A DNA stretch of 64,000 nucleotides from Mytilus californianus (GCF_021869535.1 NW_026262581.1:48732001-48796000); one strand, 5' to 3'; shown: positions 3,844 through 63,130, counted from the first letter of the stretch. A program made the numbers and translations. Notes: generated from the sequence alone by a model not told the origin.

Positions 3844-4727
3844 TTAAAAACTGCAAATGGTATTCAACATTTGATTAGTCGGCCTTCTTCTACACATCAT
3901 GTAACAATTTACAGTTGCACAGTATTTGTTGGTTGGACAATCTCCATCAGCAAGACAGTCTTTTTTACAACCAACTTTTCCACTTACTACTGACTGGGAA
4001 ACGACCCCTGAACCACAAGTACGTACTGATCCACTACGTCTTAACAAAACTTTGTCTAATACATAGAGTCCACTTCTTCTAAGGTTGGTTGCGTCAAGAA
4101 TATAAGAACATGCATGACTATACATTCCATGGCTTCTACCTATAGTTTCCGAATGAGATTTGCTAGATAGGTCGACATTTCTAGCCAGACCAGACGAAAC
4201 AATTATCCTGCCAGAGGATAACTGACCATCAATACTTGAAACTCTGGTCAAACCAGATGATAAACTTCTAATTATTTCCCTTCTTGTAGAGTACGACAAT
4301 CCAGATGCACCAATTATACTTCAAGAAGAAATTTCGACGCAGTAGCTGCTACATCCGATGTGAATACATTTATGTCCTGAACGACATAATTTATCTCCTC
4401 CACACCCATAATGACAGTCAGATAAAGAACGTGAAATACCAGCTGATGAGTCTCTAATGATTTCAGATACCAATGTCCTGCCTCCAACAAAACACCCTGA
4501 CAATCTCGTACTGCCGGATGACCCATGTGTTATAAATTCATTGCCTATTTCATCCGATGTTCCAAATGCTCTTGATCCTGCTCGTCTATTTGCATCAATA
4601 ACATCTAGTACAGAAAGGGATCCGACACCACGACGCCCGTTTATATCTCTCCCAACTGTGTTTTCAACCTGTTGAATATTCTTTACTCTATGTATGTCTT
4701 TTGGATGCTTTTCCGTTGGTGAGTAGG
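3844..4727 (-). pseudogene. Pseudogene (copy 1) of the secreted Ser/Gly/Arg-rich, two six-Cys-module protein; only the large exon remains
   Basis: Acceptor TTACAG at 4728. A GGA>TGA nonsense change at 4321-4323 splits ORFs 4321..4503 and 3844..4299, which share a frame. There is an 18-nt deletion before Cys module 1, and a 3' deletion removes the GYTR* end and the AATAAA. No signal-peptide exon is found between 4728 and copy 2. Confidence 0.9.
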
Positions 4728-7034: not shown

Positions 7035-8246
7035 TCATCGTGTGTATCCTTGAGATGGCCTTCTTCGACAAATCATGTGACAATTAACAGTTGCACAGTA
7101 TTTGTTGGTTGGACAATCTCCATCAGCAAAACACTCTTTTTTGCAACCAATTGCTCCAGTTACTACTGACTGAGAAACGACCCCTGAACCAGAAGTACGT
7201 ACTGATCCACCACGTCTTAAAGAAACTGTGTCTAATACATCATGTCCACTTCGTCTAAGGTTGGTTGCGTCAAGAATATCAGAACCGGCATGACCAGACA
7301 TTCCACGACTTCTACCTATTGTTTCCAAATGAGCATTGCTAGATAGTTCCAAATCCCTAGCCAGACCAGATGAACCAATTCTCCTGCCAGAGGATAAATG
7401 ACCATCATTACTTGAAACTCTGGTCAAACCAGATGATAAACTTCTAATTATTTCCCTCTTTATAGAGTCAGACAATCCAGATGCACCAATTATACTTCCA
7501 GAAGAAATTTCGACGCAGTAGCTGCTACATCCATTGTGAATACATTTATGTCCTGAACGACACAATTTATCTCCTCCACACCCATAATGACAGTTTCTGA
7601 TACTGTCATCGTCAGATAAAGCACGTGACATACCAGCGGAGGAGCCTCTAATGATTTCAGTTACAGATGTCCTGCTTCCAACAGAACCCCCAGACAATCT
7701 TCTACTGTCGGATAACCCACGTGTTATAAATTCGTTTCCTATTCCACGAGATGTTCCAACTGCTCCTGATCCTGCTCGTCTATTTGCATCAATAACATCT
7801 AGTACTGAAAGAGATCCGCTACCACGACGCCCGTTTATAGCTCTTCCAGATGTGTTTTCGACATGTAAAATCTTCTTCACTCCATGAATGTCTAATGCAT
7901 GCTTTTCTGTTGGTGAGTAGGCTGTAAGATTAAACATAGAATAATTTTAACAATCTTTGCAGTACAAGTAATACAAAATACAATACAGGTGAACTACTAT
8001 CTTTATATCATTTTACTTTTACATTGTAATTCACAAAAAATATGTAAATGTTGGTAATAATATTTCTTATGTACTTTAGTTATATATATTTTTTTTAAAT
8101 TTTCTGCAGTAAGGTATTTATCTCAACATTGAAAATACTTTCGTTAAAACAGCCTATAAGTCTCGAAAAAAAAGTAACATTTTCTTACCGGCTACTATCA
8201 TTGTGGTCACTGCCATCGATAAGAAAATGGTCTGGAATCTCATCAT
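7035..8246 (-). CDS. Copy 2: secreted Ser/Gly/Arg-rich protein with two six-Cys WAP-like modules, 314 aa; join(8246..8189, 7921..7035)
   Basis: The 58-nt exon encodes signal-peptide-like MMRFQTIFLSMAVTTMIVA and ends G|GTAAG. The phase-1 acceptor TTACAG|CC gives A-YSPTEKH in frame with ORF 7035..7937. Intron 267 nt; same layout in all intact copies. Confidence 0.9.
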
Positions 8247-13089: not shown

Positions 13090-13612
13090 GATGGGGGTTT
13101 ACAGAATAGAGAATAGTTGACAAAAATATAAAGAATAGAGAAAATGACCAAACAAATAAAAAATGGAGAATGAAGAGGTACTAAAATATAAAAAATAAAG
13201 AATAATGGGCAAAAGTATACAGAATAGAGAAAAATGGCATAAAAATAATAAAAAACAGAAATAATGAATCCCTCTACAGACCCTCATAGTCTGACATTAA
13301 GCTTTAGGGCAATTATGGGCATACGATACAGTTTTGATCTCACGATGATTTTTTTTTACGAAAGTTTGCATTTAAGCTATTTCTAACCAAATCAATTTGA
13401 ATATGAAATAAAAAGTATATCATCATGTAAATAATAGAATACAGAAATAATAAACCCCTCTCCAGACCCTCATAATCTGCCGATGACATTAAGATTTAGG
13501 ACAATTATGGGCATACGATACAGTTTTGATCCCACGGTGATTTTTTTTAGGAAAGTTTGCATTCAAGCGATTTCTTACCCAATCAATTTGAATATGAAAT
13601 AAAAGCATATCT
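13090..13612. repeat. Short A-rich minisatellite followed by a ~180-bp imperfect tandem dimer
   Basis: AGAATAGAGAA units at 13100-13260. GGGCATACGATACAGTTTTGAT occurs at ~13317 and ~13510. Confidence 0.75.
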
Positions 13613-34372: not shown

Positions 34373-35105
34373 GAAGGCCATATAATTTACCTCAATTTAG
34401 GATAGACTCTTGAATTTTGAAGAGTCGAAATAGGATAATATATAGATAGAGTAATCTCTATATAGAAAATGAACGTGGATGTGTATTTATACATCCCAAA
34501 AAAAACGTTTGAAAAGAATACAAATTTAGTTATGTCTTAATCTGCTGATGACAAAATCGATATTTACGCCAATGTAAACTATATTCAAAGATCTAATTAC
34601 AACATTGGTAAGATAACCTTTACTAATAAGTTTGTTTAAAGGTTCGATTAGTTTACACGGATCACAAAGTGATTTCCACGCTTTTAGTACAATATTACCG
34701 TGAAATTTAGCATGTGAAATACCGTTTGTAATAAGTTTTCTACAGATACAGCCAAATTTACTAATCAAATCTTTGTATCTATGAAAGAATTTAGTAAAAG
34801 TTTTAAGCAATTTATGGTAACGAAATCCCTGACTTGATAATTTACCAGTGATGCATTGATCACGTTCGTTAAAATCTATGACATCACTACACACACGGGT
34901 ATAACGAACGAGTTGGGATATATAAACACCGTATGATGGAGCCAAAGGAACATCGCCGTCTAAAAAGGAAAAAATAACAATAGGGAATGAAAAATCGCCT
35001 CTTTTGTCGTAAATTTTAGTATGGAGTTTCCCTTTAGAAATTGAAATGTCTAAATCTAGAAAAGGACAACTACTGCTGCTTATGTTAGATTTATTTAAAG
35101 TAAGT
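33365..35105 (-). mobile_element. 5'-truncated Penelope-like retroelement fragment (RT C-terminus 34526-35105, frameshifted) with long 3' region
   Basis: Translates to …PFLDLDISISKGKLHTKIYDKRGDFSFPIV…PSYGVYISQLVRY…QGFRYHKL, the post-catalytic RT region of Penelope-like elements. Collinear with 41830-43670 in the opposite orientation. Confidence 0.75.
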
Positions 35106-35282: not shown

Positions 35283-36637
35283 TCATCGTGTGTATCCATT
35301 AGACGGCCTTCTTCGACAAATCATGTGACAATTAACAGTTGCACAGTATTTGTTCGTTGGACAATCTCCATCACGATGACACTCTTTTTTGCAACCAATT
35401 GCTCCACTTACTACTGATTGAGAAACGACCCTTGAACCAGAAGTACGTACTGATCCACCACGTCTTAAAGAAACTGTGTCTAATACATCAAGTCCACTTC
35501 GTCTCAGGTTGGTTGCGTCAAGAATATCAGAACCTGCATGACCAGAAATTCCACGGCTTCTACCTATTGTTTCCAAATGAGAATTGCTAGATAGGTCAAA
35601 ATTTTTAGCCAGACCAGATGAACCAATTCTACTGCCAGATGATAAATGACCATCATTTCTTGAAACTCTATTCAAGTCAGATGATAAACTTCTAAATATT
35701 TCCCTTCTGATAGAGTCCGACAAACCAGATGCACCAATTATACTTCCAGAAGAAATTTCGACGCAGTAACTGCTACAGCCATTGTGAACACATTTATGTC
35801 CTGAACGACATAATTTATCTCCTCCACACCCATAATGACAATTATTGATACTGTCATCGTCAGATAAAGCACGTGAAATACCAGCTGAGGAGCCTCTAAT
35901 GATTTCAGATACAGATGTCCTGCTTCCAACAGAACCCCCCGACAATCTCGTACTGCCCGATGACCCACGTGTTATAAATTCATTGCCTATTCCATGAGAT
36001 GTTCCAAATGCTCTTGATCCTGTTCGTCTATTTGCATCAATTACATCCAATGCAGAAAGGGACCTGCCACCACGACGCCCGTTTAAATCTCTTCCAAGTG
36101 TGTTTTCGACTTGTAAAACCTTCTTCACTCCATGTATATCTAATGCATGCTTTTCCGTTGGTGTGTAGGCTGTAAAATTAAATATCGAACAATTCTTATT
36201 ATCCTCACAAATCAAGTAATACAAAATACATTACAGATGAACTACTATCTACATACAGGATATGTATTGCCAATAAGACAATTATTCACTATAAACCAAA
36301 GGATGATGTAAACAACTACAGGCCGTACGGTGTCAGTCCCAATCAAAGGACATACCGCATAGTAAGCTTTAAATGACTCCACATGACCAAATGTGAAACA
36401 AATCAAAACAAAACAATCAATCGTTTCAAAATTTTACATTATAATTTACAAAAATATGTAGATATTGTAATATTCTTTCTTATATACTTTAATTATATAT
36501 ATATTTTTTGGAATTCCTTCAGTAAGGTATTTAGATTTTATCTCAACATGGAAAATAGCAAATCGAATATTTTTCTTACCGGCTACTATCATTATGGTCA
36601 CTGCCACCGAAAAGAATATGGTCTGGAATCTCATCAT
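35283..36637 (-). CDS. Copy 3: secreted Ser/Gly/Arg-rich two six-Cys-module protein, 314 aa; join(36637..36580, 36169..35283)
   Basis: Signal exon MMRFQTIFFSVAVTIMIVA ending G|GTAAG; acceptor TTACAG; 410-nt intron; all 12 Cys intact. Confidence 0.9.
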
Positions 36638-41829: not shown

Positions 41830-43670
41830 GCAACTAAACATAAATCTAACATAAACAGCAGCAGTTGTCCTTTTCTAGATTTAGACATTTCAATTTCTAA
41901 AGGGAAACTCCGTACTAAAATTTACAACAAAAGAGACGATTTTTCATTCCCTATTGTTAATTTTCCTTTTTTTAGACGGCGATGTGCCTTTGGCTCCATC
42001 ATATCCCAACTCGTTCGGTATGCCCGTGTGTGTAGTGATGTCATAGATTTTAACGAACGTAATCAATGCATCACTGGTAAATCATTTAGTCAGGGATTTC
42101 GTTACCATAAATTACTCAAAACTTTTACTAAATTCTTTCATAGATACAAAGATTTGATTAGTAAATTTGGCTGTACCTGTAGAAAATTTATTAAAAATAG
42201 TATTTCACATCCTAAATTTTACGGTAATATTGTACTTAAAGCGCGGAAATCACTATGTGATCCGTGTAAACTCATCGAACCTTTAAACAAACTTATTAGT
42301 AAGGGTTATCGTACCAATGTTGTAATTAGATCTCTCAATATAGTTTACATTGGCATCAATATCGATTTTGTCATTAGGAAATTAAAACATAACTAAATTT
42401 GTATTTTCTTTTCAAACGGGATGTATAGAGACACACACACGTTCATTTTTATCTATAAAGAAGTCACTCCTAACTATCCTACTACCTGTCGATACATTTT
42501 TTTTTGGCATTGCACAAGTCATGTCTTCTTTGACTGTTCATGACGTTAAAATACTAAATCCCTGGGATGTGTTTTAGTTAATTTCAGTCTCTGATGCATG
42601 ATGTTTTATTATTAATTGTTTTGGCTTTTAACTAGTTGTCAGTAACTGCGAGTACTCTCTAATCTTACTTTCTTTTTAATTTGACCTGTTGATACTATTT
42701 GTAATGCTATTTTGTTATTTAATGTTAACATGGATCTTGTCTATATACCAGCTTTGATTATTTGGTATTACTACAAGTTTTCACTTCTTCGTACTATGAA
42801 CATCAAAATTATTTCATTTCTCCTTAAATACTGTTCTTGAAACTGTACAGGAAGTTTTATCTAGCACTTATTGTATAGTTTTATTGTTGAAATTCACCCC
42901 ATACGTACCAAGTGTTAGATTAGTTTTATTGATATTAAAGAAATTTCTTGGTATTCCTTAACGGAAGATTTTATACACACAGAAGAAGAAGTACAAATGT
43001 ATACTGAACAACAAATTTTTTTTCATTTACCGTTGTATAATATGACGCAGGTTTTTTTCAAAAGTGATTATTTTCTAAATATTGTGTAACATTTCACAGT
43101 GGTATCATACATTAACTTTGTTTAAACCTGTTTATTTACTTTTGACCTTAATTATTTAGCCCTTATAATTTTTATTAACTATGTATTTGCATTCAGGTAT
43201 CACAGATCAAATTAATTCGTTCATTGTGTGTTAATTTACGTTTTATGAATGAGTTAAGCCTTCCAATCGATATTTTATAGTGTGTCTTTCTATGTTATGA
43301 TGTTATACTATTGAATCAGAAAAGGGAGACGGTTTGGTACCATTAAAACGTTTAATCCCGCTGCAAATGTTTGCACCTGTCCTAAGTCAGGAATCTGATG
43401 TACAGTAGTTGTCGTCTATTTATGTAGTTTATACGTGTTTCTCGTTTCTCGTTTTTATATAGATTAGACCGTTGGTTTTCCCGTTTGAATGGTTTGACAC
43501 TAGTAATTTTTGGGGCCCTTAATAACTTGCTGTTCGGTGTGAGCCAATGCTCCGTGTTGAAGGCCGTACCTTTACCTATAATGGTTTACTTTTATAAATT
43601 GTTACTTAGATAGAGAGTTGTCTCATTAGCACTCATACAACATCTTCCTATATCTATATATCTATTACAA
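41830..43670 (+). mobile_element. 5'-truncated Penelope-like retroelement insertion: RT C-terminal fragment (41833-42396, disrupted) ending in the high-copy repeat
   Basis: ORF 42028..42396 plus upstream FLDLDISISKGK…KRDDFSFPIVNFPF. The whole 1.84 kb is absent at the paralogous site ~29510-29530. Confidence 0.75.
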
Positions 43671-46378: not shown

Positions 46379-48218
46379 TCATCGTGTGTATCCATTAGAC
46401 GGCCTTCTTCGACAAATCATGTGACAATTAACAGTTGCACAGTATTTGTTCGTTGGACAATCTCCATCACGATGGCACTCTTTTTTGCAACCAATTGATC
46501 CACTTACTACTGACTGAGAAACGACCCCTGAACCAGAAGTACGTACTGATCCACCACGTCTTAAGGAAACTGTGTCTAATACATCAAGTCTACTTCGTCT
46601 AAGGTTGGTTGCGTCAAGAATATCAGAACCTGCATGACCAGATATTCCACGACTTCTACCTATTGTTTCCAAATGAGCTTTGCTAGATAGGCCCAAATCC
46701 CTGGCCAGACCAGATGAACCAATTCTGCTGCCAGAGGATAAATGACCATCATTACTCGAAACTCTGGTCAAGCCAGATGACAAACTTCTAATTATTTCCC
46801 TCCTTATAGAGTCGGACAATCCAGATGCACCAATTATACTTCCAGAAGAAATTTCGACGCAGTAGCTGCTACAACCATTGTGAATACATTTATGTCCTGA
46901 ACGACATAATTTATCTCCTCCACACCCATAATGACAGTTACTGATAATGTCATCGCCAGATAAAGCACGTGAAATACCAGCTGAGGAGCCTCTAATAATT
47001 TCAGTTACAGATGTCCTGCCTCCAATAGAACCCCCAGAAAATCCTCTACTAGCTGATGACCCGCGTGATAAAAAGTCATTGCCTATTCCATGAGATGTTC
47101 CAACTGCTCTTGATCCTGCTCGTCTGTTTGCATCAATTACATCCAGTACAGAAAGGGATCCAGCACCACTACGCCCGTTTATGTCTCTCCCAACTGTGTT
47201 TTCGACCTGTAAAATCTTCTTCACTCCATGTTTGTCTAATGCATGCTTTTCTGTTGGTGAATAGGCTGTAAGGATAAATATCGAACTATTTTTACAATAT
47301 TCACAAATCAAGTAATACAAAATACAATACAGGTGAATTACTATCTGCATATGAATATCAGGATATATGTAGTAATTGCAAATAAGACAACTATTCACCA
47401 TACACCAAAGGATGGTGTAAACTTGTAAAACCTTCTTCACTCCATTTATATCTAATGCATGCTTTTCAATGGGTGCATAGACTGTAAAATTAAATATCTC
47501 ACAATTTATATAATCTTTATCAATAAAGTAATACCATAAACAATACAGGTTAACTAATATTTACATATTTATATAAGGATACTTGGTACAATTGTCAAAA
47601 AACAATTATCCACCATAGACCAAAAGTCGAGGTTGTAAAGAGTTGCAGATATCGTTCGGTTTCAGCACTGAGCAAAGCCCATACCTTATCGTAAGCTATT
47701 ACAAGACCCCTATGATAAAATTCAAAACAATTCAAAACACAAAACCATTCGTTTCAAACTTTTTTCTTCTAATTTACAAAAAATATGCAGATTCTCATTT
47801 TTTTATATAGATCAGACTGTTGGTTTTCCTGTTAGAATGGTTTTACACTAGTCATTTTGGGGGCCCTTTAAAGCTTGCTGTTTGAAGTGAGCCTAGGCTC
47901 CGTGTTGAAGGCCGTACTTTTACCTATAATGGTTTACTTTTACAAATTTAGACTTGGATGGAGAGTTGTCTCATTGGCACTCATATCACATCTTCTTATA
48001 TCTAGATGTTGGTACTATGCTTTCTTATAATTATGTACGAAAGTTATCTATGTTTAAGAACATTTCTGCGGTAAGATATTTAGATTTTATATACACTTTG
48101 AAAACACTTTTGTCAAACAGCTTATATATATCGAAATGTCAAATTAAATAATTTGCTTACCAGTTACTGTCATTGTGGTCAATGCCATCAAAAAGAATAT
48201 GGTCTGGAACCTCATCAT
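46379..48218 (-). CDS. Copy 4: secreted Ser/Gly/Arg-rich two six-Cys-module protein, 314 aa; join(48218..48161, 47265..46379)
   Basis: Signal exon MMRFQTIFFLMALTTMTVT ending G|GTAAG; acceptor TTACAG at 47266; 895-nt intron containing a repeat and a duplicated acceptor. Confidence 0.88.
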
Positions 48219-48741
48219 TTTTAAGAATTCTGAAATTTACAGGATAATATCATTTCTAAGAAAATAACAATTCACATATTTAATTTTAATACGAATCATT
48301 TCATGGAAAAAAATAGTCTGACTTTACTATACACCTGCAAGACAGTAAAATTAAAAAAAAATATACTCTTTGAGGCTAATATTTTCTTTGGGAGGTATAT
48401 AAAATGCCAAAACAATTTTGATACTAAGCCAACATGAGGGGTGTGTTGTGCTTTTTTTGGAGCTACAGGTTGTTCAAATTGAGATGTAGTGGAAGGATTA
48501 TACCTGAAGAAGGCATGTGAATTAAAAAAAAAATCTGAAAGTCGATAGAATTTTTAAATGAACATCCGAGACAGCCCTTATCAAATGCATTCTGGTAATA
48601 AAAAATAGAAAACAATTTGAGAAAAGAAGGAAAAGGTGCCAATATTTCGACCGTTATGATCTTTTTTAAGGGATATCTTCGCAATAAGAAAAGAAAAAAC
48701 CAAGCTGAATGTGAACAGTGTGTCCTTAAGAAAAATATAAA

Positions 48742-49841
48742 CGATACTCAGGTTTATCAAATCATAAGACCGCAAGGAGACTGGTGCGATCTGTCCAAAC
48801 GCCTAGAAAAATGTTTGTCTGATATTGGTGATTGGATGAGTGTCAACATGCTGAAACTTAATGAAGACAAAACAGAATTAATCATTTTTGCACCAAAGCA
48901 TCAGTTGAAGCATCTTTCCGATTTCCGTCTGACATTTGATGGAACTGTGTTAAGCGACGTTTCTTGTGTGAAAAATCTGGGCATGTACTTTGATAAAACC
49001 ATCAACATGGAACATCAAGCCAGTGCGATCACTAAGGCTTGTTTTTACCAAATTCGGAATATTGGTCGAATTCGATCTTTAATTTCAGTAGAATCCTGTA
49101 AAACACTAGTATGCTCCCTAGTTACATCAAGGCTGGACTATGGCAATGCATTGTTGTACGGTACTAACACCAACATTATCAGTAAGTTACAGCGGGTCCA
49201 AAATACAGCAGCACGTTTGATTACACGAAAAAAGAAATTTGACTCAATTACGCCTGTTCTAATATCGTTACACTGGCTACCCATACATTACCGTTGCCAA
49301 TATAAACTTCTTTTATATGTGTACAAAGCCCAGAATGGCAAGGCTCCTAGCTACCTTCAAGATTTAATTACGCCTTACAAACCCAGTAGATCCCTCAGGT
49401 CGGAAAATTGTATGCTCTTACATCCTCCGAATGACGTCCGAACGAAAAGCTACGGTGAGAGGCGTTTTGACAAGGCTGCACCTACACTCTGGAACAGTTT
49501 GCCATCGTCCTTGCGGAGTGTAAATTCTTTGGATGTTTTTAAAAAGCAACTCAAGACTCACTTATTTCGGACTGCTTTTAAGGATTTCTTGTAGATTTTA
49601 TATACTTTTAATTGACTGCTTTAGTTTTAGACTGTTTTTTTGTATATTTTAGGGTACATGCATTTTTCATTTTTAGTATTTTATTAATTTTTATATGCTT
49701 GTTTGATTCTTGTAAGTTGGTGCTTTGTAATTTATGTTTTATGTATTTTTGTATTTTATTTATTTTCAAATGTGAAGCGCTTAGAGTAATTGTTGTTATT
49801 ATATAATGCGCTGTTATTGTATTTATTATTTATTATTATTA
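48742..49841 (+). mobile_element. 5'-truncated L2/CR1-group LINE (RT C-terminal part and 3' UTR with (TTA)n tail), antisense in intron 1 of copy 4
   Basis: ORF 48617..49594 has DTQVY, LKLNEDKTE, SRLDYGNALL, LQRVQNTAARL and LHWLP motifs. Absent from the equivalent site of copy 5 (~63640). Confidence 0.9.
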
Positions 49842-61514: not shown

Positions 61515-63130
61515 TCATCGTGTGTATCCATTAGACGGCCTTCTTCGACAAATCATGTGACAATTAACAGTTGCGCAGTATTTGTTCGTTGAACAATCTC
61601 TATCAGCAAGACAGTCTTTTTTACAACCAATTTTCCCATTTACTACTGACTGGGAAACGACCCCTGAACCAGAAGTACGTACTGATCCACCACGTCTCAA
61701 AGAAACTGTATCTAATACATCAAGTCCACTTCTTCTAAGGTTGGTTGCGTCAAGAAAATCAGAACCTGCTTGACCAGACATTCCACGACTTCTACTTATT
61801 GTTTCCAAATGAGCATTGCTAGATAGTTCTAAATTTCTAGCCAGACCAGATGAAACAATTCTGCTGCCAGAGGATAAATGGCCATCATTACTCGAAACTC
61901 TGGTCACGCCAGATGATAAACTTCTAACTATTTCACTTCTTATAGAGTCCGACAATCCAGATGCACCAATTATACTTCCAGAAGAAATTTCGACACAGTA
62001 GCTGCTACAACCATTGTGAATACATTTATGTCCTGAACGACATAATTTATCTCCTCCACACCCATAATAACAGTTACTGATACTGTCATCGTCAGATAAA
62101 GCACGTGACATACCGGCTGAGGAGCCTCTAATGATTTCAGATACAGATGCCCTGCTTCCAATAGAACCCCCAGAAAATCCTCTACTAGCTGATGACCCGC
62201 GTGATAAAAAGCCATTGCCTGTTCCATGAGATGTTCCAACTGCTCTTGATCCTGTTCGTCTATTTGCATCAATTACATCCAGTACAGAAAGAGATCCAAC
62301 ACCACTACGTCCGTTTATGTCTCTTCCAACTGTGTTTTCGACCTGTAAAATCTTCTTCACTCCATGTTTGTCTAATGCATGCTTTTCTGTTGGTGAATAG
62401 GCTGTAATAATAAATATCGAATCATTTTTACAAAATTCACAAATCAAGTTATACAAAATACAAAACATGTGAACTACTGTCTACATATGGATTTCAGGAT
62501 ATATGTAGTTATTGCAAATAAGACAACTATTCACCATACCAGATGTAAACTTGTAAAACCTTCTGCACTCCATGTAGATCTAATGCATGCTTTTCCGTGG
62601 GTGCATAGACTGTAAAATTAAATATCTGACAATTGATATCATCTTTACTAATCAAGTAATATCATAAACAATACAGGTTAACTAATATTTATATATTTAT
62701 ATAAGGATACTTGTATTATTGCCGATAAAACAACTATCCACCATAGACCAAATGGCGAGGTTATCAACAGTTGCAGGTACAGTTCGGTTTCAGCACTGAG
62801 CAAAGCCCATACCTTATCGTAAGCTATTAAAAGACCCCATGATAAGATTAGAAACAATTCAAAACACAAAACCATTCGTTTCAAACTTTTTCATTATAAT
62901 TTACAAAAATATGCAGATGTTGGTAATATGCCTTCTTGTGATTATGTACGAAAGTTGATTATGTTTAAGAACATTTCTGCGGTAAGATATTTAGATTTTA
63001 TCTACACATTGAAAAAAACTTTTGTTAAACAGCTTATATATATCGAAATGGCCAATAAAATAACTTTCTTACCGGTTACTGTCATTGTGGTCAATGCCGT
63101 CAAAAAGAATATGGTCTGGAACCTCATCAT
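61515..63130 (-). CDS. Copy 5: secreted Ser/Gly/Arg-rich two six-Cys-module protein, 314 aa; join(63130..63073, 62401..61515)
   Basis: Signal exon MMRFQTIFFLTALTTMTVT ending G|GTAAG; acceptor TTACAG at 62402; 671-nt intron. The non-coding first exon is predicted beyond the window end. Confidence 0.88.

What the first reader, a model, noticed from the sequence alone, without database searches (positions are those of the whole stretch)
7068..7592. Two six-Cys modules that look like WAP domains missing exactly one disulfide pair
Both modules (7592-7515 CHYGCGGDKLCRSGHKCIHNGCSSYC; 7145-7068 CKKECFADGDCPTNKYCATVNCHMIC) share the spacing C-x3-C-x5-C-x5-C-x4-C-x3-C and carry WAP-like CxxDxDC, KC and NGC features. 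The WAP four-disulfide core pairs C1-C6, C2-C7, C3-C5 and C4-C8. Here the N-terminal C1 and the second Cys of the CC doublet (C6) are both absent, i.e. one complete pair is lost and a three-disulfide WAP-like core remains. WAP domains occur in mollusc shell proteins (perlwapin, lustrin A) and in crustins.
Basis: partly seen in the sequence, partly recalled or inferred. Interest (0 to 1): 0.7.

Follow-up and report, generated by a model that had tools for sequence, protein, structure and literature searches.

The report
Three-disulfide mini-WAP modules in mussel protein
The two six-cysteine motifs are real, conserved modules of a secreted California-mussel protein. They are best read as WAP domains that lost one disulfide pair, but the family is already auto-labelled 'WAP domain-containing' and its function is unknown.

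Summary
Observation confirmed. Both modules lie at the stated coordinates with spacing C3-C5-C5-C4-C3 and do not occur in shuffled sequence.

They sit in exon 2 of an intact two-exon gene for a 314-aa secreted, basic, Ser/Gly/Arg-rich protein of Mytilus californianus. The window holds four intact copies and one broken copy. The array has roughly 35-40 copies over about 470 kb.

The WAP reading is supported:
- Pfam WAP is the best family: 22.5 bits for the whole protein (cut-off 20.8), but 19.4 and 20.2 for the single modules.
- The alignment to canonical mussel WAPs is gap-free and places the six Cys on C2, C3, C4, C5, C7 and C8.
- AlphaFold models of both modules have WAP domains as their top PDB matches.
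- A paralogue in the same array keeps a canonical eight-Cys WAP.
- The same six-Cys spacing sits beside canonical WAPs in vertebrate WFDC3/WFDC8-like proteins.

Caveats:
- The central hairpin motif is generic. It scores equally well against bacterial four-Cys repeats, and the DPY module is the best PDB sequence hit.
- Disulfide connectivity is inferred, not measured.

Function is unknown; I favour a beads-on-a-string extracellular protein over a classical protease inhibitor. The scan noted the same reading on a paralogue 173 kb upstream (s1-288056). Modest novelty.

The parts
8189..8246 (-). Coding exon 1 of the gene: ATG at 8246, 19 codons plus 1 base, signal peptide, GT donor at 8188-8187.
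   Evidence: The joined frame gives 945 nt, 314 aa plus stop. The N-terminus matches annotated relatives such as P0002.
7922..8188 (-). 267-nt intron (GT...AG) between the signal-peptide exon and the main exon.
   Evidence: donor GTAAGA, acceptor TTACAG.
7035..7921 (-). Coding exon 2: the whole mature protein, Ser/Gly/Arg-rich, with both modules; stop codon at 7037-7035.
   Evidence: 63 Mytilus homologues with E down to 2e-174.
7515..7592 (-). Module 1 (type 1): six-Cys mini-WAP.
   Evidence: Pfam WAP 19.4 bits, profile positions 11-40 of 41. Model pLDDT 84; top PDB matches SLPI, elafin and omwaprin.
7068..7145 (-). Module 2 (type 2, C-terminal): six-Cys mini-WAP with the CxxDxDCP motif.
   Evidence: Pfam WAP 20.2 bits, profile positions 12-39 of 41. 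Model pLDDT 80; top PDB matches SLPI, omwaprin, elafin and nawaprin.
7038..7067 (-). Basic C-terminal tail that starts with RRR directly after the last Cys.
   Evidence: The three basic positions are K/R in 56-58 of 60 family members.
35283..36637 (-). Paralogue W3: exon 1 36637-36580, exon 2 36169-35283; intact, same two modules.
46379..48218 (-). Paralogue W4: exon 1 48218-48161, exon 2 47265-46379. By eye its exon-2 product reads the same as the matching part of P0002 (LOC127720415, M. californianus).
61515..63130 (-). Paralogue W5: exon 1 63130-63073, exon 2 62401-61515; intact.
3844..4725 (-). Broken paralogue W1: one in-frame TGA, extra Cys residues, changed C-terminus; both module patterns still readable.
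   Evidence: One search places it at C1:48735874-48736725 with 1 TGA.

Best explanation
The two motifs are independently folding, three-disulfide derivatives of the WAP four-disulfide-core domain. They keep C2-C8 of WAP in exact register but lack the N-terminal C1 segment and C6, which pair with each other in WAP. The inferred pairing is Cys1-Cys5, Cys2-Cys4 and Cys3-Cys6 of the module (WAP C2-C7, C3-C5, C4-C8).

They belong to a secreted, basic (pI about 9.5), Ser/Gly/Arg-rich 314-aa protein of Mytilus californianus. Its layout is: signal peptide, conserved linker, type-1 module, conserved linker with LD...RR repeats, type-2 module, RRR tail. The gene is one of roughly 35-40 tandem copies.

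Shown: the modules, their conservation, the gene model, the array, the sequence and predicted-fold match to WAP, and a family member that still has a canonical WAP.

Inferred: the connectivity, and origin by duplication of a WAP followed by loss of the C1-C6 pair.

Function (low confidence): I favour a beads-on-a-string extracellular protein in which the disulfide-locked modules act as stable knobs between conserved flexible linkers. It could be surface or matrix material, or host defence. I think a classical tight-binding protease inhibitor is less likely, because the C1-C6 anchor of the WAP inhibitory loop is gone. My rough split is 40% structural or matrix, 35% antimicrobial or protease-modulating, and 25% a precursor cut at the conserved RR sites; these are not exclusive.
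For: Sequence and conservation:
- Exact spacing, absent from shuffles and invariant in 67 distinct modules from five Mytilus species.
- dN/dS among window copies is 0.07-0.35 in modules and 0.36-0.47 in linkers.

Sequence match to WAP:
- Pfam WAP is the top family: 22.5 bits for the protein against a cut-off of 20.8, covering profile positions 11/12 to 39/40 of 41.
- 66 of 69 modules hit WAP, against 15 for DPY and 12 for Dickkopf_N.
- hhalign against 28 canonical WAPs of the same genome: 95%, E 4e-8, 31 gap-free columns, with a non-Cys residue opposite C6.

Predicted fold:
- AlphaFold pLDDT is 80 and 84, with a beta-hairpin at residues 21-34.
- Among 48,161 PDB representatives, WAPs take ranks 1-4 for module 2 (SLPI, omwaprin, elafin Z 4.4-4.1; nawaprin 3.1) and ranks 1-3 for module 1 (Z 4.1-3.9; nawaprin rank 5). 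The best non-WAP is Z 2.7.
- Foldseek's top hit is omwaprin, TM 0.67-0.69, rmsd about 1 A.

Context:
- The L035 ORF is the same family (same linkers, type-2 module and tail) but has a canonical WAP (50.8 bits, positions 1-41) plus seven type-1 modules.
- Neighbouring genes have one canonical WAP followed by one exact (plus one near-exact) or 11 six-Cys modules.
- A whole-library profile search returns canonical WAP arrays, and vertebrate WFDC3/WFDC8-like proteins that carry the same six-Cys spacing.

Less likely a classical inhibitor:
- The segment before the first Cys is the least confident part of the models (pLDDT 64 and 72, against 82-92 in the core).
- The residue after the first Cys is conserved within each module type rather than hypervariable.
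Against: - Single modules score just below Pfam's cut-off (19.4 and 20.2 against 20.8).
- Identity to canonical WAPs at non-Cys positions is only 15-19%.
- Control: the module profile matches bacterial four-Cys CxxDxDCxxGxxCxxGxC repeats as strongly (95%, E 3.6e-8, 21 columns).
- The best PDB sequence hit is the DPY module (E 5.7e-4), ahead of elafin at 0.034.
- In the ESM Atlas, Dickkopf_N and Myxococcota clusters score TM 0.66-0.67, against 0.62-0.63 for WAP clusters.
- All Foldseek E-values are above 0.1 and Z is below 5, as expected for 38 residues.
- AlphaFold may be drawn towards WAP by its training set.
- There is no expression, proteomic or biochemical data. No transcript-derived (Logan) members appeared among the relatives, and no paper on the family was found.
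Confidence: 0.75

Rival explanations
1. The module is a generic two-disulfide hairpin of the DPY/CREMP kind (Cx5Cx5Cx4C, pairing 1-3 and 2-4) with an extra outer disulfide between the first and last Cys. On this reading the match to WAP spacing is convergent.
For: DPY (1oig) is the best PDB sequence hit, E 5.7e-4. hhalign against bacterial four-Cys repeats is as strong as against WAP. Atlas matches to Dickkopf_N and Myxococcota repeats have TM 0.66-0.67. DPY spacing and the 1-3, 2-4 pairing of this module class are described in PMC12723725.
Against: DPY reaches only 16.9-17 bits on the window's type-2 module (cut-off 27), does not appear for its type-1 module, and hits 15 of 69 modules overall. 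The match covers 21 columns, against 31 for WAP, and leaves the outer two Cys unexplained. No DPY-type chain is among the top fold matches, while WAPs head both lists. The modules sit in proteins and gene families with canonical WAPs in both mussels and vertebrates.
Confidence: 0.15
2. The module is an inhibitor-cystine-knot (knottin) peptide with pairing 1-4, 2-5, 3-6.
For: The loop lengths fall within the knottin range. Several knottin toxins and EETI-II appear at Z 2.0-2.7.
Against: They rank below all or nearly all of the WAP chains. No knottin family appears in Pfam at E<=1 apart from two weak CarbpepA_inh hits. The gap-free alignment to WAP implies a different pairing.
Confidence: 0.03
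3. Functional rival: the protein is a polyprotein precursor. Convertases cut at the conserved dibasic sites and release short LD-motif peptides and cationic mini-WAP peptides, which could be antimicrobial or signalling.
For: Three dibasic sites are nearly invariant in 60 members: NRR 59 and 54 of 60, the second LRR 59 and 60 of 60, and RRR after the last Cys 56-58 of 60. The LD...RR unit repeats, and by eye there are more copies in the three-module member P0037 than in the window protein. Module 2 plus the tail has a net charge of about +3.
Against: There is no Gly-before-basic amidation signal. The linkers are conserved along their whole length, not only at the cut sites. There is no peptidomic evidence. 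RR-x-S could equally be a kinase or binding motif.
Confidence: 0.25
4. Functional rival: a canonical WAP-type serine-protease inhibitor, with the residue after the first Cys as P1 (Lys or Arg in type-2 modules).
For: K or R follows the first Cys in 38 of 39 distinct type-2 modules. The top structural match is the SLPI domain bound to trypsin. Invertebrate WAPs with the short C2-x3-C3 loop can inhibit proteases (abstract of PMC3742519).
Against: The C1-bearing half of the binding loop and its C1-C6 anchor are missing, and the preceding residues are modelled with low confidence. Type-1 modules have His, Ser or Asn at that position.
Confidence: 0.15

Closest known systems
WAP four-disulfide-core domain (Pfam PF00095), short-loop type such as omwaprin and nawaprin; also elafin and SLPI
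   Same: Identical spacing from C2 to C8, the CxxDxxC motif, the beta-hairpin core, and the best sequence-family and PDB fold matches.
   Different: C1 with its N-terminal segment is missing. C6 is replaced by Val/Ile (type 1) or Ala/Thr (type 2). That leaves three disulfides instead of four. The modules sit inside long Ser/Gly-rich linkers and all lie in one exon.
Vertebrate WFDC3/WFDC8-like predicted proteins (goat, muntjac, pygmy sperm whale, alpaca, kiwi, quail, peafowl)
   Same: They carry modules with exactly the same six-Cys spacing and no C1, often beside canonical WAP domains.
   Different: Short linkers of about 8-10 residues. Non-Cys identity to the mussel modules is only 15-21%. 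Whether the origin is shared or independent is unresolved.
Mollusc shell WAP proteins (perlwapin, lustrin A, Lottia WAP/antistasin proteins)
   Same: Secreted mollusc proteins built from WAP-type modules (PMC3374290; PMC5854119).
   Different: Those carry canonical WAP domains and are shown to be in shell. This family has none of that evidence, and most members lack a canonical WAP.
DPY module of Drosophila Dumpy and the CREMP modules of avian eggshell membrane
   Same: The central Cx5Cx5Cx4C spacing (DPY), small hairpin modules strung on flexible linkers, and a structural beads-on-a-string precedent (PMC12723725).
   Different: Those have four Cys and two disulfides (1-3, 2-4). They score below the Pfam cut-off here and are absent from the top fold matches.
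Mussel Cys-rich byssal cuticle proteins mfp-16 to mfp-19
   Same: Secreted Mytilus californianus proteins. One of them is said to be WAP-like in an earlier scan note (s1-302583); see also PMC7018715.
   Different: No sequence link was tested or found. The present family has only 4% Cys and is not reported from foot glands.

Membership tests
WAP four-disulfide core (PF00095) | Eight conserved Cys forming four disulfides, including the CC doublet and the N-terminal C1 (usually C-P). | tested here: not met
   Each module has six Cys. There is no CC anywhere in 63 relatives or the window copies, and no Cys in the 20+ residues before either of the window's modules.
WAP four-disulfide core (PF00095) | Score at or above the Pfam gathering threshold (20.8 bits). 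| tested here: inconclusive
   The whole protein scores 22.5 bits (passes). The single modules score 19.4 and 20.1-20.2 (just below). 66 of 69 modules have WAP as a hit at E<=1.
WAP four-disulfide core (PF00095) | Spacing and register of C2-C8 and the CxxDxxC core. | tested here: met
   Gap-free hhalign over 31 columns to 28 canonical WAPs of the same genome. Gap-free HMM alignment to elafin residues 30-53.
WAP four-disulfide core (PF00095) | The WAP fold. | tested here: met
   This rests on predicted models only (pLDDT 80 and 84). WAPs take ranks 1-4 (module 2) and 1-3 (module 1) of 48,161 chains, at Z 3.9-4.4 for SLPI, elafin and omwaprin. Foldseek's top hit is omwaprin, TM 0.67-0.69. The Atlas search is less selective.
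WAP four-disulfide core (PF00095) | Disulfide pairing C2-C7, C3-C5, C4-C8. | not testable with these tools
   Model coordinates are not returned. The pairing is inferred from gap-free superposition on WAP chains. MS or NMR is needed.
WAP four-disulfide core (PF00095) | Homology shown by family context. | tested here: met
   A paralogue in the same array has a canonical WAP (50.8 bits, positions 1-41) plus seven type-1 modules and the type-2 module. Six-Cys and eight-Cys modules are mixed in neighbouring mussel genes and in vertebrate WFDC proteins.
Dumpy DPY module (PF21164) | Pfam cut-off of 27 bits; four Cys as Cx5Cx5Cx4C with 1-3, 2-4 pairing. | tested here: not met
   16.9-17 bits on the window's type-2 module, and only 15 of 69 modules hit. 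The central spacing matches, but the two outer Cys are extra.
Dickkopf N-terminal domain (PF04706) | Pfam cut-off of 25 bits; a cysteine-rich domain of about 51 profile positions. | tested here: not met
   16.9-17.1 bits covering profile positions 1-25 of 51. PDB Dkk chains score Z 2.1.
Knottin (inhibitor cystine knot) | 1-4, 2-5, 3-6 pairing with a knotted topology. | tested here: inconclusive
   Knottins appear only at Z 2.0-2.7, below all or nearly all of the WAP chains. Connectivity was not measured.

The most novel reading that the evidence does not exclude
The six-Cys 'mini-WAP' is a distinct, self-sufficient three-disulfide domain class. It arose repeatedly, in mytilid mussels and in mammalian and avian WFDC genes, by joint loss of the C1-C6 pair. 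In mussels it seeded a lineage-specific array of about 40 genes that encodes a major, still unidentified secreted material or defence protein.
Probability: 0.35. Interest if true: 0.5.

Novelty: new variant of a known kind. Interest (0 to 1): 0.35.

Why it matters
The case gives a clean natural example of a disulfide-rich fold that lost one complete cystine pair and stayed conserved. That is useful for understanding and engineering small cystine-stabilised scaffolds.

It also flags a large, mussel-specific tandem gene family of unknown function. Current annotation calls its members only 'uncharacterized' or 'WAP domain-containing'.

The gain is modest. The WAP link is already made by automatic annotation, the same six-Cys variant exists in vertebrate WFDC-like proteins, and nothing yet ties the family to byssus, shell or immunity.

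Tried and rejected
Literature:
- Full-text searches for the family by peptide strings and by accession numbers found nothing.
- Searches on Mytilus with WAP and byssus, shell matrix or antimicrobial terms found no paper on this family.
- A search for six-Cys WAP variants found no description of them.

Other look-ups:
- The ESM Atlas feature search gave no usable hit.
- A PDB sequence search with the whole exon gave only noise.
- Contig look-ups aimed at expression context returned only genomic or metagenomic contigs.

Analyses that did not settle a question:
- hhalign probability as a discriminator was rejected after the control against bacterial four-Cys repeats gave the same value.
- Pairwise identity at non-Cys positions could not show whether mussel and vertebrate six-Cys modules share an origin. 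In that script the 'C6 removed' set for the CC-x4 type was built wrongly, so I do not use it.

Procedure:
- Knottin and Dickkopf readings were considered and ranked low (see rivals).
- All database and fold searches used exon 2 or its parts by reference. The joined two-exon sequence was sent to no search or fold tool; it was used only in local scripts for length, pI and a family alignment.

Full report
**What is there.** The window is AT-rich eukaryotic DNA, about 31% GC. It lies at G000:C1:48732001-48796000 of a 1.65-Gb genome. Read by eye, the exon-2 product of one copy in the window (46379-47440, minus strand) is the same as the matching part of P0002, Mytilus californianus LOC127720415, so the organism is the California mussel.

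On the minus strand, 7592-7515 and 7145-7068 encode two 26-residue stretches with exactly C-x3-C-x5-C-x5-C-x4-C-x3-C. A six-frame scan finds this pattern ten times in the window, always in five paralogous copies. Twenty shuffles of the window gave none.

**Gene model.**
- The ATG is at 8246. It opens a 58-nt coding exon, 8246-8189, that encodes the signal peptide.
- A 267-nt GT-AG intron follows, 8188-7922.
- Exon 2, 7921-7035, encodes the whole mature protein.
- The joined frame is 945 nt: 314 aa plus the stop.
- The N-terminus agrees with annotated relatives.
- The mature protein is basic (pI about 9.5). Its composition is 16.7% Ser, 14.3% Gly, 10.5% Arg and only 4.1% Cys, and all the Cys are in the two modules.
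- All searches used exon 2 or its parts by reference. The joined sequence was not sent to any search or fold tool.

**Family and array.**
- The word search found 63 relatives, all from five Mytilus species. Many are named 'WAP domain-containing protein' by UniRef; the rest are 'uncharacterized'.
- Members carry 0, 1, 2 or 3 modules. The spacing never varies, no CC doublet occurs, and the six Cys are the only invariant module columns.
- The window holds four intact copies, W2 to W5. Pairwise dS is 0.11-0.26. dN/dS is 0.07-0.35 in modules and 0.36-0.47 in linkers. A fifth copy is broken.
- Genome-wide, the family forms one array on C1 from 48.52 to 48.99 Mb. It has about 24 intact two-module copies, three copies with one stop, about ten three-module copies, and fragments.
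- The linkers are about as conserved as the modules. Three dibasic sites are nearly invariant.

**Is it WAP? Sequence evidence.**
- Pfam WAP is the best family. The protein scores 22.5 bits against a cut-off of 20.8. The single modules score 19.4 and 20.2. The match covers profile positions 11/12 to 39/40 of 41, so only the C1-bearing start of the profile is missing.
- 66 of 69 distinct modules hit WAP, against 15 for DPY and 12 for Dickkopf_N.
- The same genome has at least 90 canonical WAP matches. I aligned 28 of them.
- Profile-profile comparison with that alignment gives 95% probability and E 4e-8 over 31 gap-free columns. The six Cys fall on C2, C3, C4, C5, C7 and C8, and a non-Cys residue falls on C6.
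- The residue at the C6 position is Val/Ile in type-1 modules and Ala/Thr in type-2 modules.

**Is it WAP? Predicted fold.**
- AlphaFold models of both modules (pLDDT 80 and 84) show a beta-hairpin at residues 21-34.
- An aligner run against 48,161 PDB representatives puts WAPs at ranks 1-4 for module 2: SLPI Z 4.4, omwaprin 4.3, elafin 4.1, nawaprin 3.1. For module 1 it puts WAPs at ranks 1-3: SLPI 4.1, elafin 4.0, omwaprin 3.9, with nawaprin fifth at 2.7. The alignments are gap-free. The best non-WAP chain is at Z 2.7.
- Foldseek ranks omwaprin first, with TM 0.67-0.69 and rmsd about 1 A.

**Context, the most discriminating evidence.**
- At the edge of the array, a 757-aa open frame (L035 2260-4533, minus strand) is clearly the same family. 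It has the same exon start, the same linkers, the type-2 module and the basic tail. It begins with a canonical eight-Cys WAP (50.8 bits, positions 1-41) followed by seven type-1 modules.
- Two further genes about 0.4 Mb upstream have one canonical WAP followed by six-Cys modules. One has a single exact module plus a variant with x4 in the third loop. The other has eleven exact modules.
- A profile of the module searched against 1.84 billion proteins gave 413 hits at E<=0.001. The top non-mussel hits include pure canonical WAP arrays. They also include vertebrate WFDC3/WFDC8-like proteins from goat, muntjac, pygmy sperm whale, alpaca, kiwi, quail and peafowl. These carry the same exact six-Cys spacing without C1, often beside canonical WAPs.
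- One detail on origin: the cluster's own canonical WAPs have CC-x4-C. Deleting one Cys codon of the doublet would therefore give exactly the module spacing. With the commoner CC-x3-C type, substitution of C6 does the same. This is inference.

**Caveats.**
- The central four-Cys part, CxxDxDCxxGxxCxxGxC, is a generic hairpin motif.
- The best PDB sequence hit of the module profile is the Dumpy DPY module, E 5.7e-4, against 0.034 for elafin.
- As a control, the module profile matches bacterial four-Cys repeats as strongly as it matches WAP (95%, E 3.6e-8, 21 columns). Canonical WAP matches those repeats only weakly (31%).
- In the ESM Atlas, Dickkopf_N and Myxococcota clusters score as well as WAP clusters.
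- Non-Cys identity to canonical WAPs is only 15-19%. The two module types share only 4% at non-Cys positions.
- DPY/CREMP-type modules pair 1-3 and 2-4 (PMC12723725). The concrete rival is therefore a DPY-like hairpin (module Cys2-Cys4 and Cys3-Cys5) clamped by Cys1-Cys6.
- Coordinates of the models are not available. The WAP-type pairing (1-5, 2-4, 3-6) is inferred from the gap-free superpositions, together with the known pairing of elafin (from my own knowledge of the WAP literature).

**Function.**
- Nothing measured bears on function.
- I consider a classical canonical inhibitor less likely. In elafin and SLPI the binding loop spans the C1-C2-C3 segment and is anchored by C1-C6 (general knowledge). 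That half is absent here. The residues before the first Cys are the least confident in both models. The P1-equivalent residue is conserved within each type (K/R in 38 of 39 type-2 modules; H/S/N in type 1) rather than hypervariable.
- Several features fit a bulk extracellular or surface protein built as knobs on flexible linkers: the high copy number, moderate purifying selection, basic Ser/Gly/Arg-rich conserved linkers, and the precedent of small disulfide modules strung on linkers in structural proteins (PMC12723725).
- A cationic defence protein, or a precursor cut at the conserved RR sites, remains a live alternative.
- A weak point against a bulk product: no transcript-derived members were seen among the relatives. 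Near-identical paralogues may, however, simply assemble poorly.

**Novelty.** The family is already auto-labelled as WAP-containing, and the six-Cys variant also exists in annotated vertebrate WFDC-like proteins. I found no paper that describes either the variant or this mussel family. The same reading was noted by this scan on a paralogue 173 kb upstream (s1-288056). I rate it a new variant of a known kind, of modest interest.

Noticed in passing
G000:C1:48.52-48.99 Mb (the window is part of it): One tandem array holds roughly 35-40 copies of this gene family. It has about 24 intact two-module copies, 3 copies with a single stop, about 10 three-module copies and fragments; most copies are on the minus strand.
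   Followed up: partly
L035 2260-4533 (-), = G000:C1:48992759-48995032: A 757-aa open frame of the same family that keeps a canonical eight-Cys WAP at the N-terminus. It is followed by seven type-1 six-Cys modules and the type-2 module with the basic tail.
   Followed up: yes
L032 1772-3745 (+) and L031 1588-2517 (+), about 0.42-0.44 Mb upstream on C1: Genes with one canonical WAP followed by six-Cys modules in a single exon: eleven in L032 (named 'prestalk protein-like', P0064), and one exact plus one variant in L031. Relatives at 39-42% identity (P0068-P0070) come from unnamed assemblies.
   Followed up: partly
P0073, P0075, P0078, P0079, P0081, P0098, P0106: Predicted vertebrate WFDC3/WFDC8-like proteins (kiwi, muntjac, pygmy sperm whale, quail, peafowl, alpaca, goat) contain modules with the same six-Cys spacing and no C1, often beside canonical WAP domains.
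   Followed up: partly
P0083, P0085, P0091, P0135: Proteins of bacterial type (P0085 is named from a Deltaproteobacteria MAG; the other three are unnamed) carry long arrays of four-Cys CxxDxDCxxGxxCxxGxC repeats. These match the module profile as strongly as WAP does, which warns against trusting short Cys-rich profile matches.
   Followed up: partly
window 3844-4725 (-): A broken copy of the gene with one in-frame TGA, extra Cys residues and a replaced C-terminus. The type-1 module pattern is still readable at 4339-4416.
   Followed up: partly
window 48617-49594 (+): A 325-aa ORF between two gene copies with no Pfam hit at E<=0.01. From memory it looks like the C-terminal part of a non-LTR retrotransposon ORF2; this was not verified.
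   Followed up: partly
window 34526-34945 (-) and 42028-42396 (+): Two related ORFs (139 and 122 aa) in opposite orientation between gene copies. The one scanned (34529-34945) has no Pfam hit. They are probably part of a repeated element.
   Followed up: no
I did not test it. The coding exons of this copy are intact.
   Followed up: no
window 13103-13266: A 29-bp tandem repeat, 5.6 copies, 70% matches.
   Followed up: no
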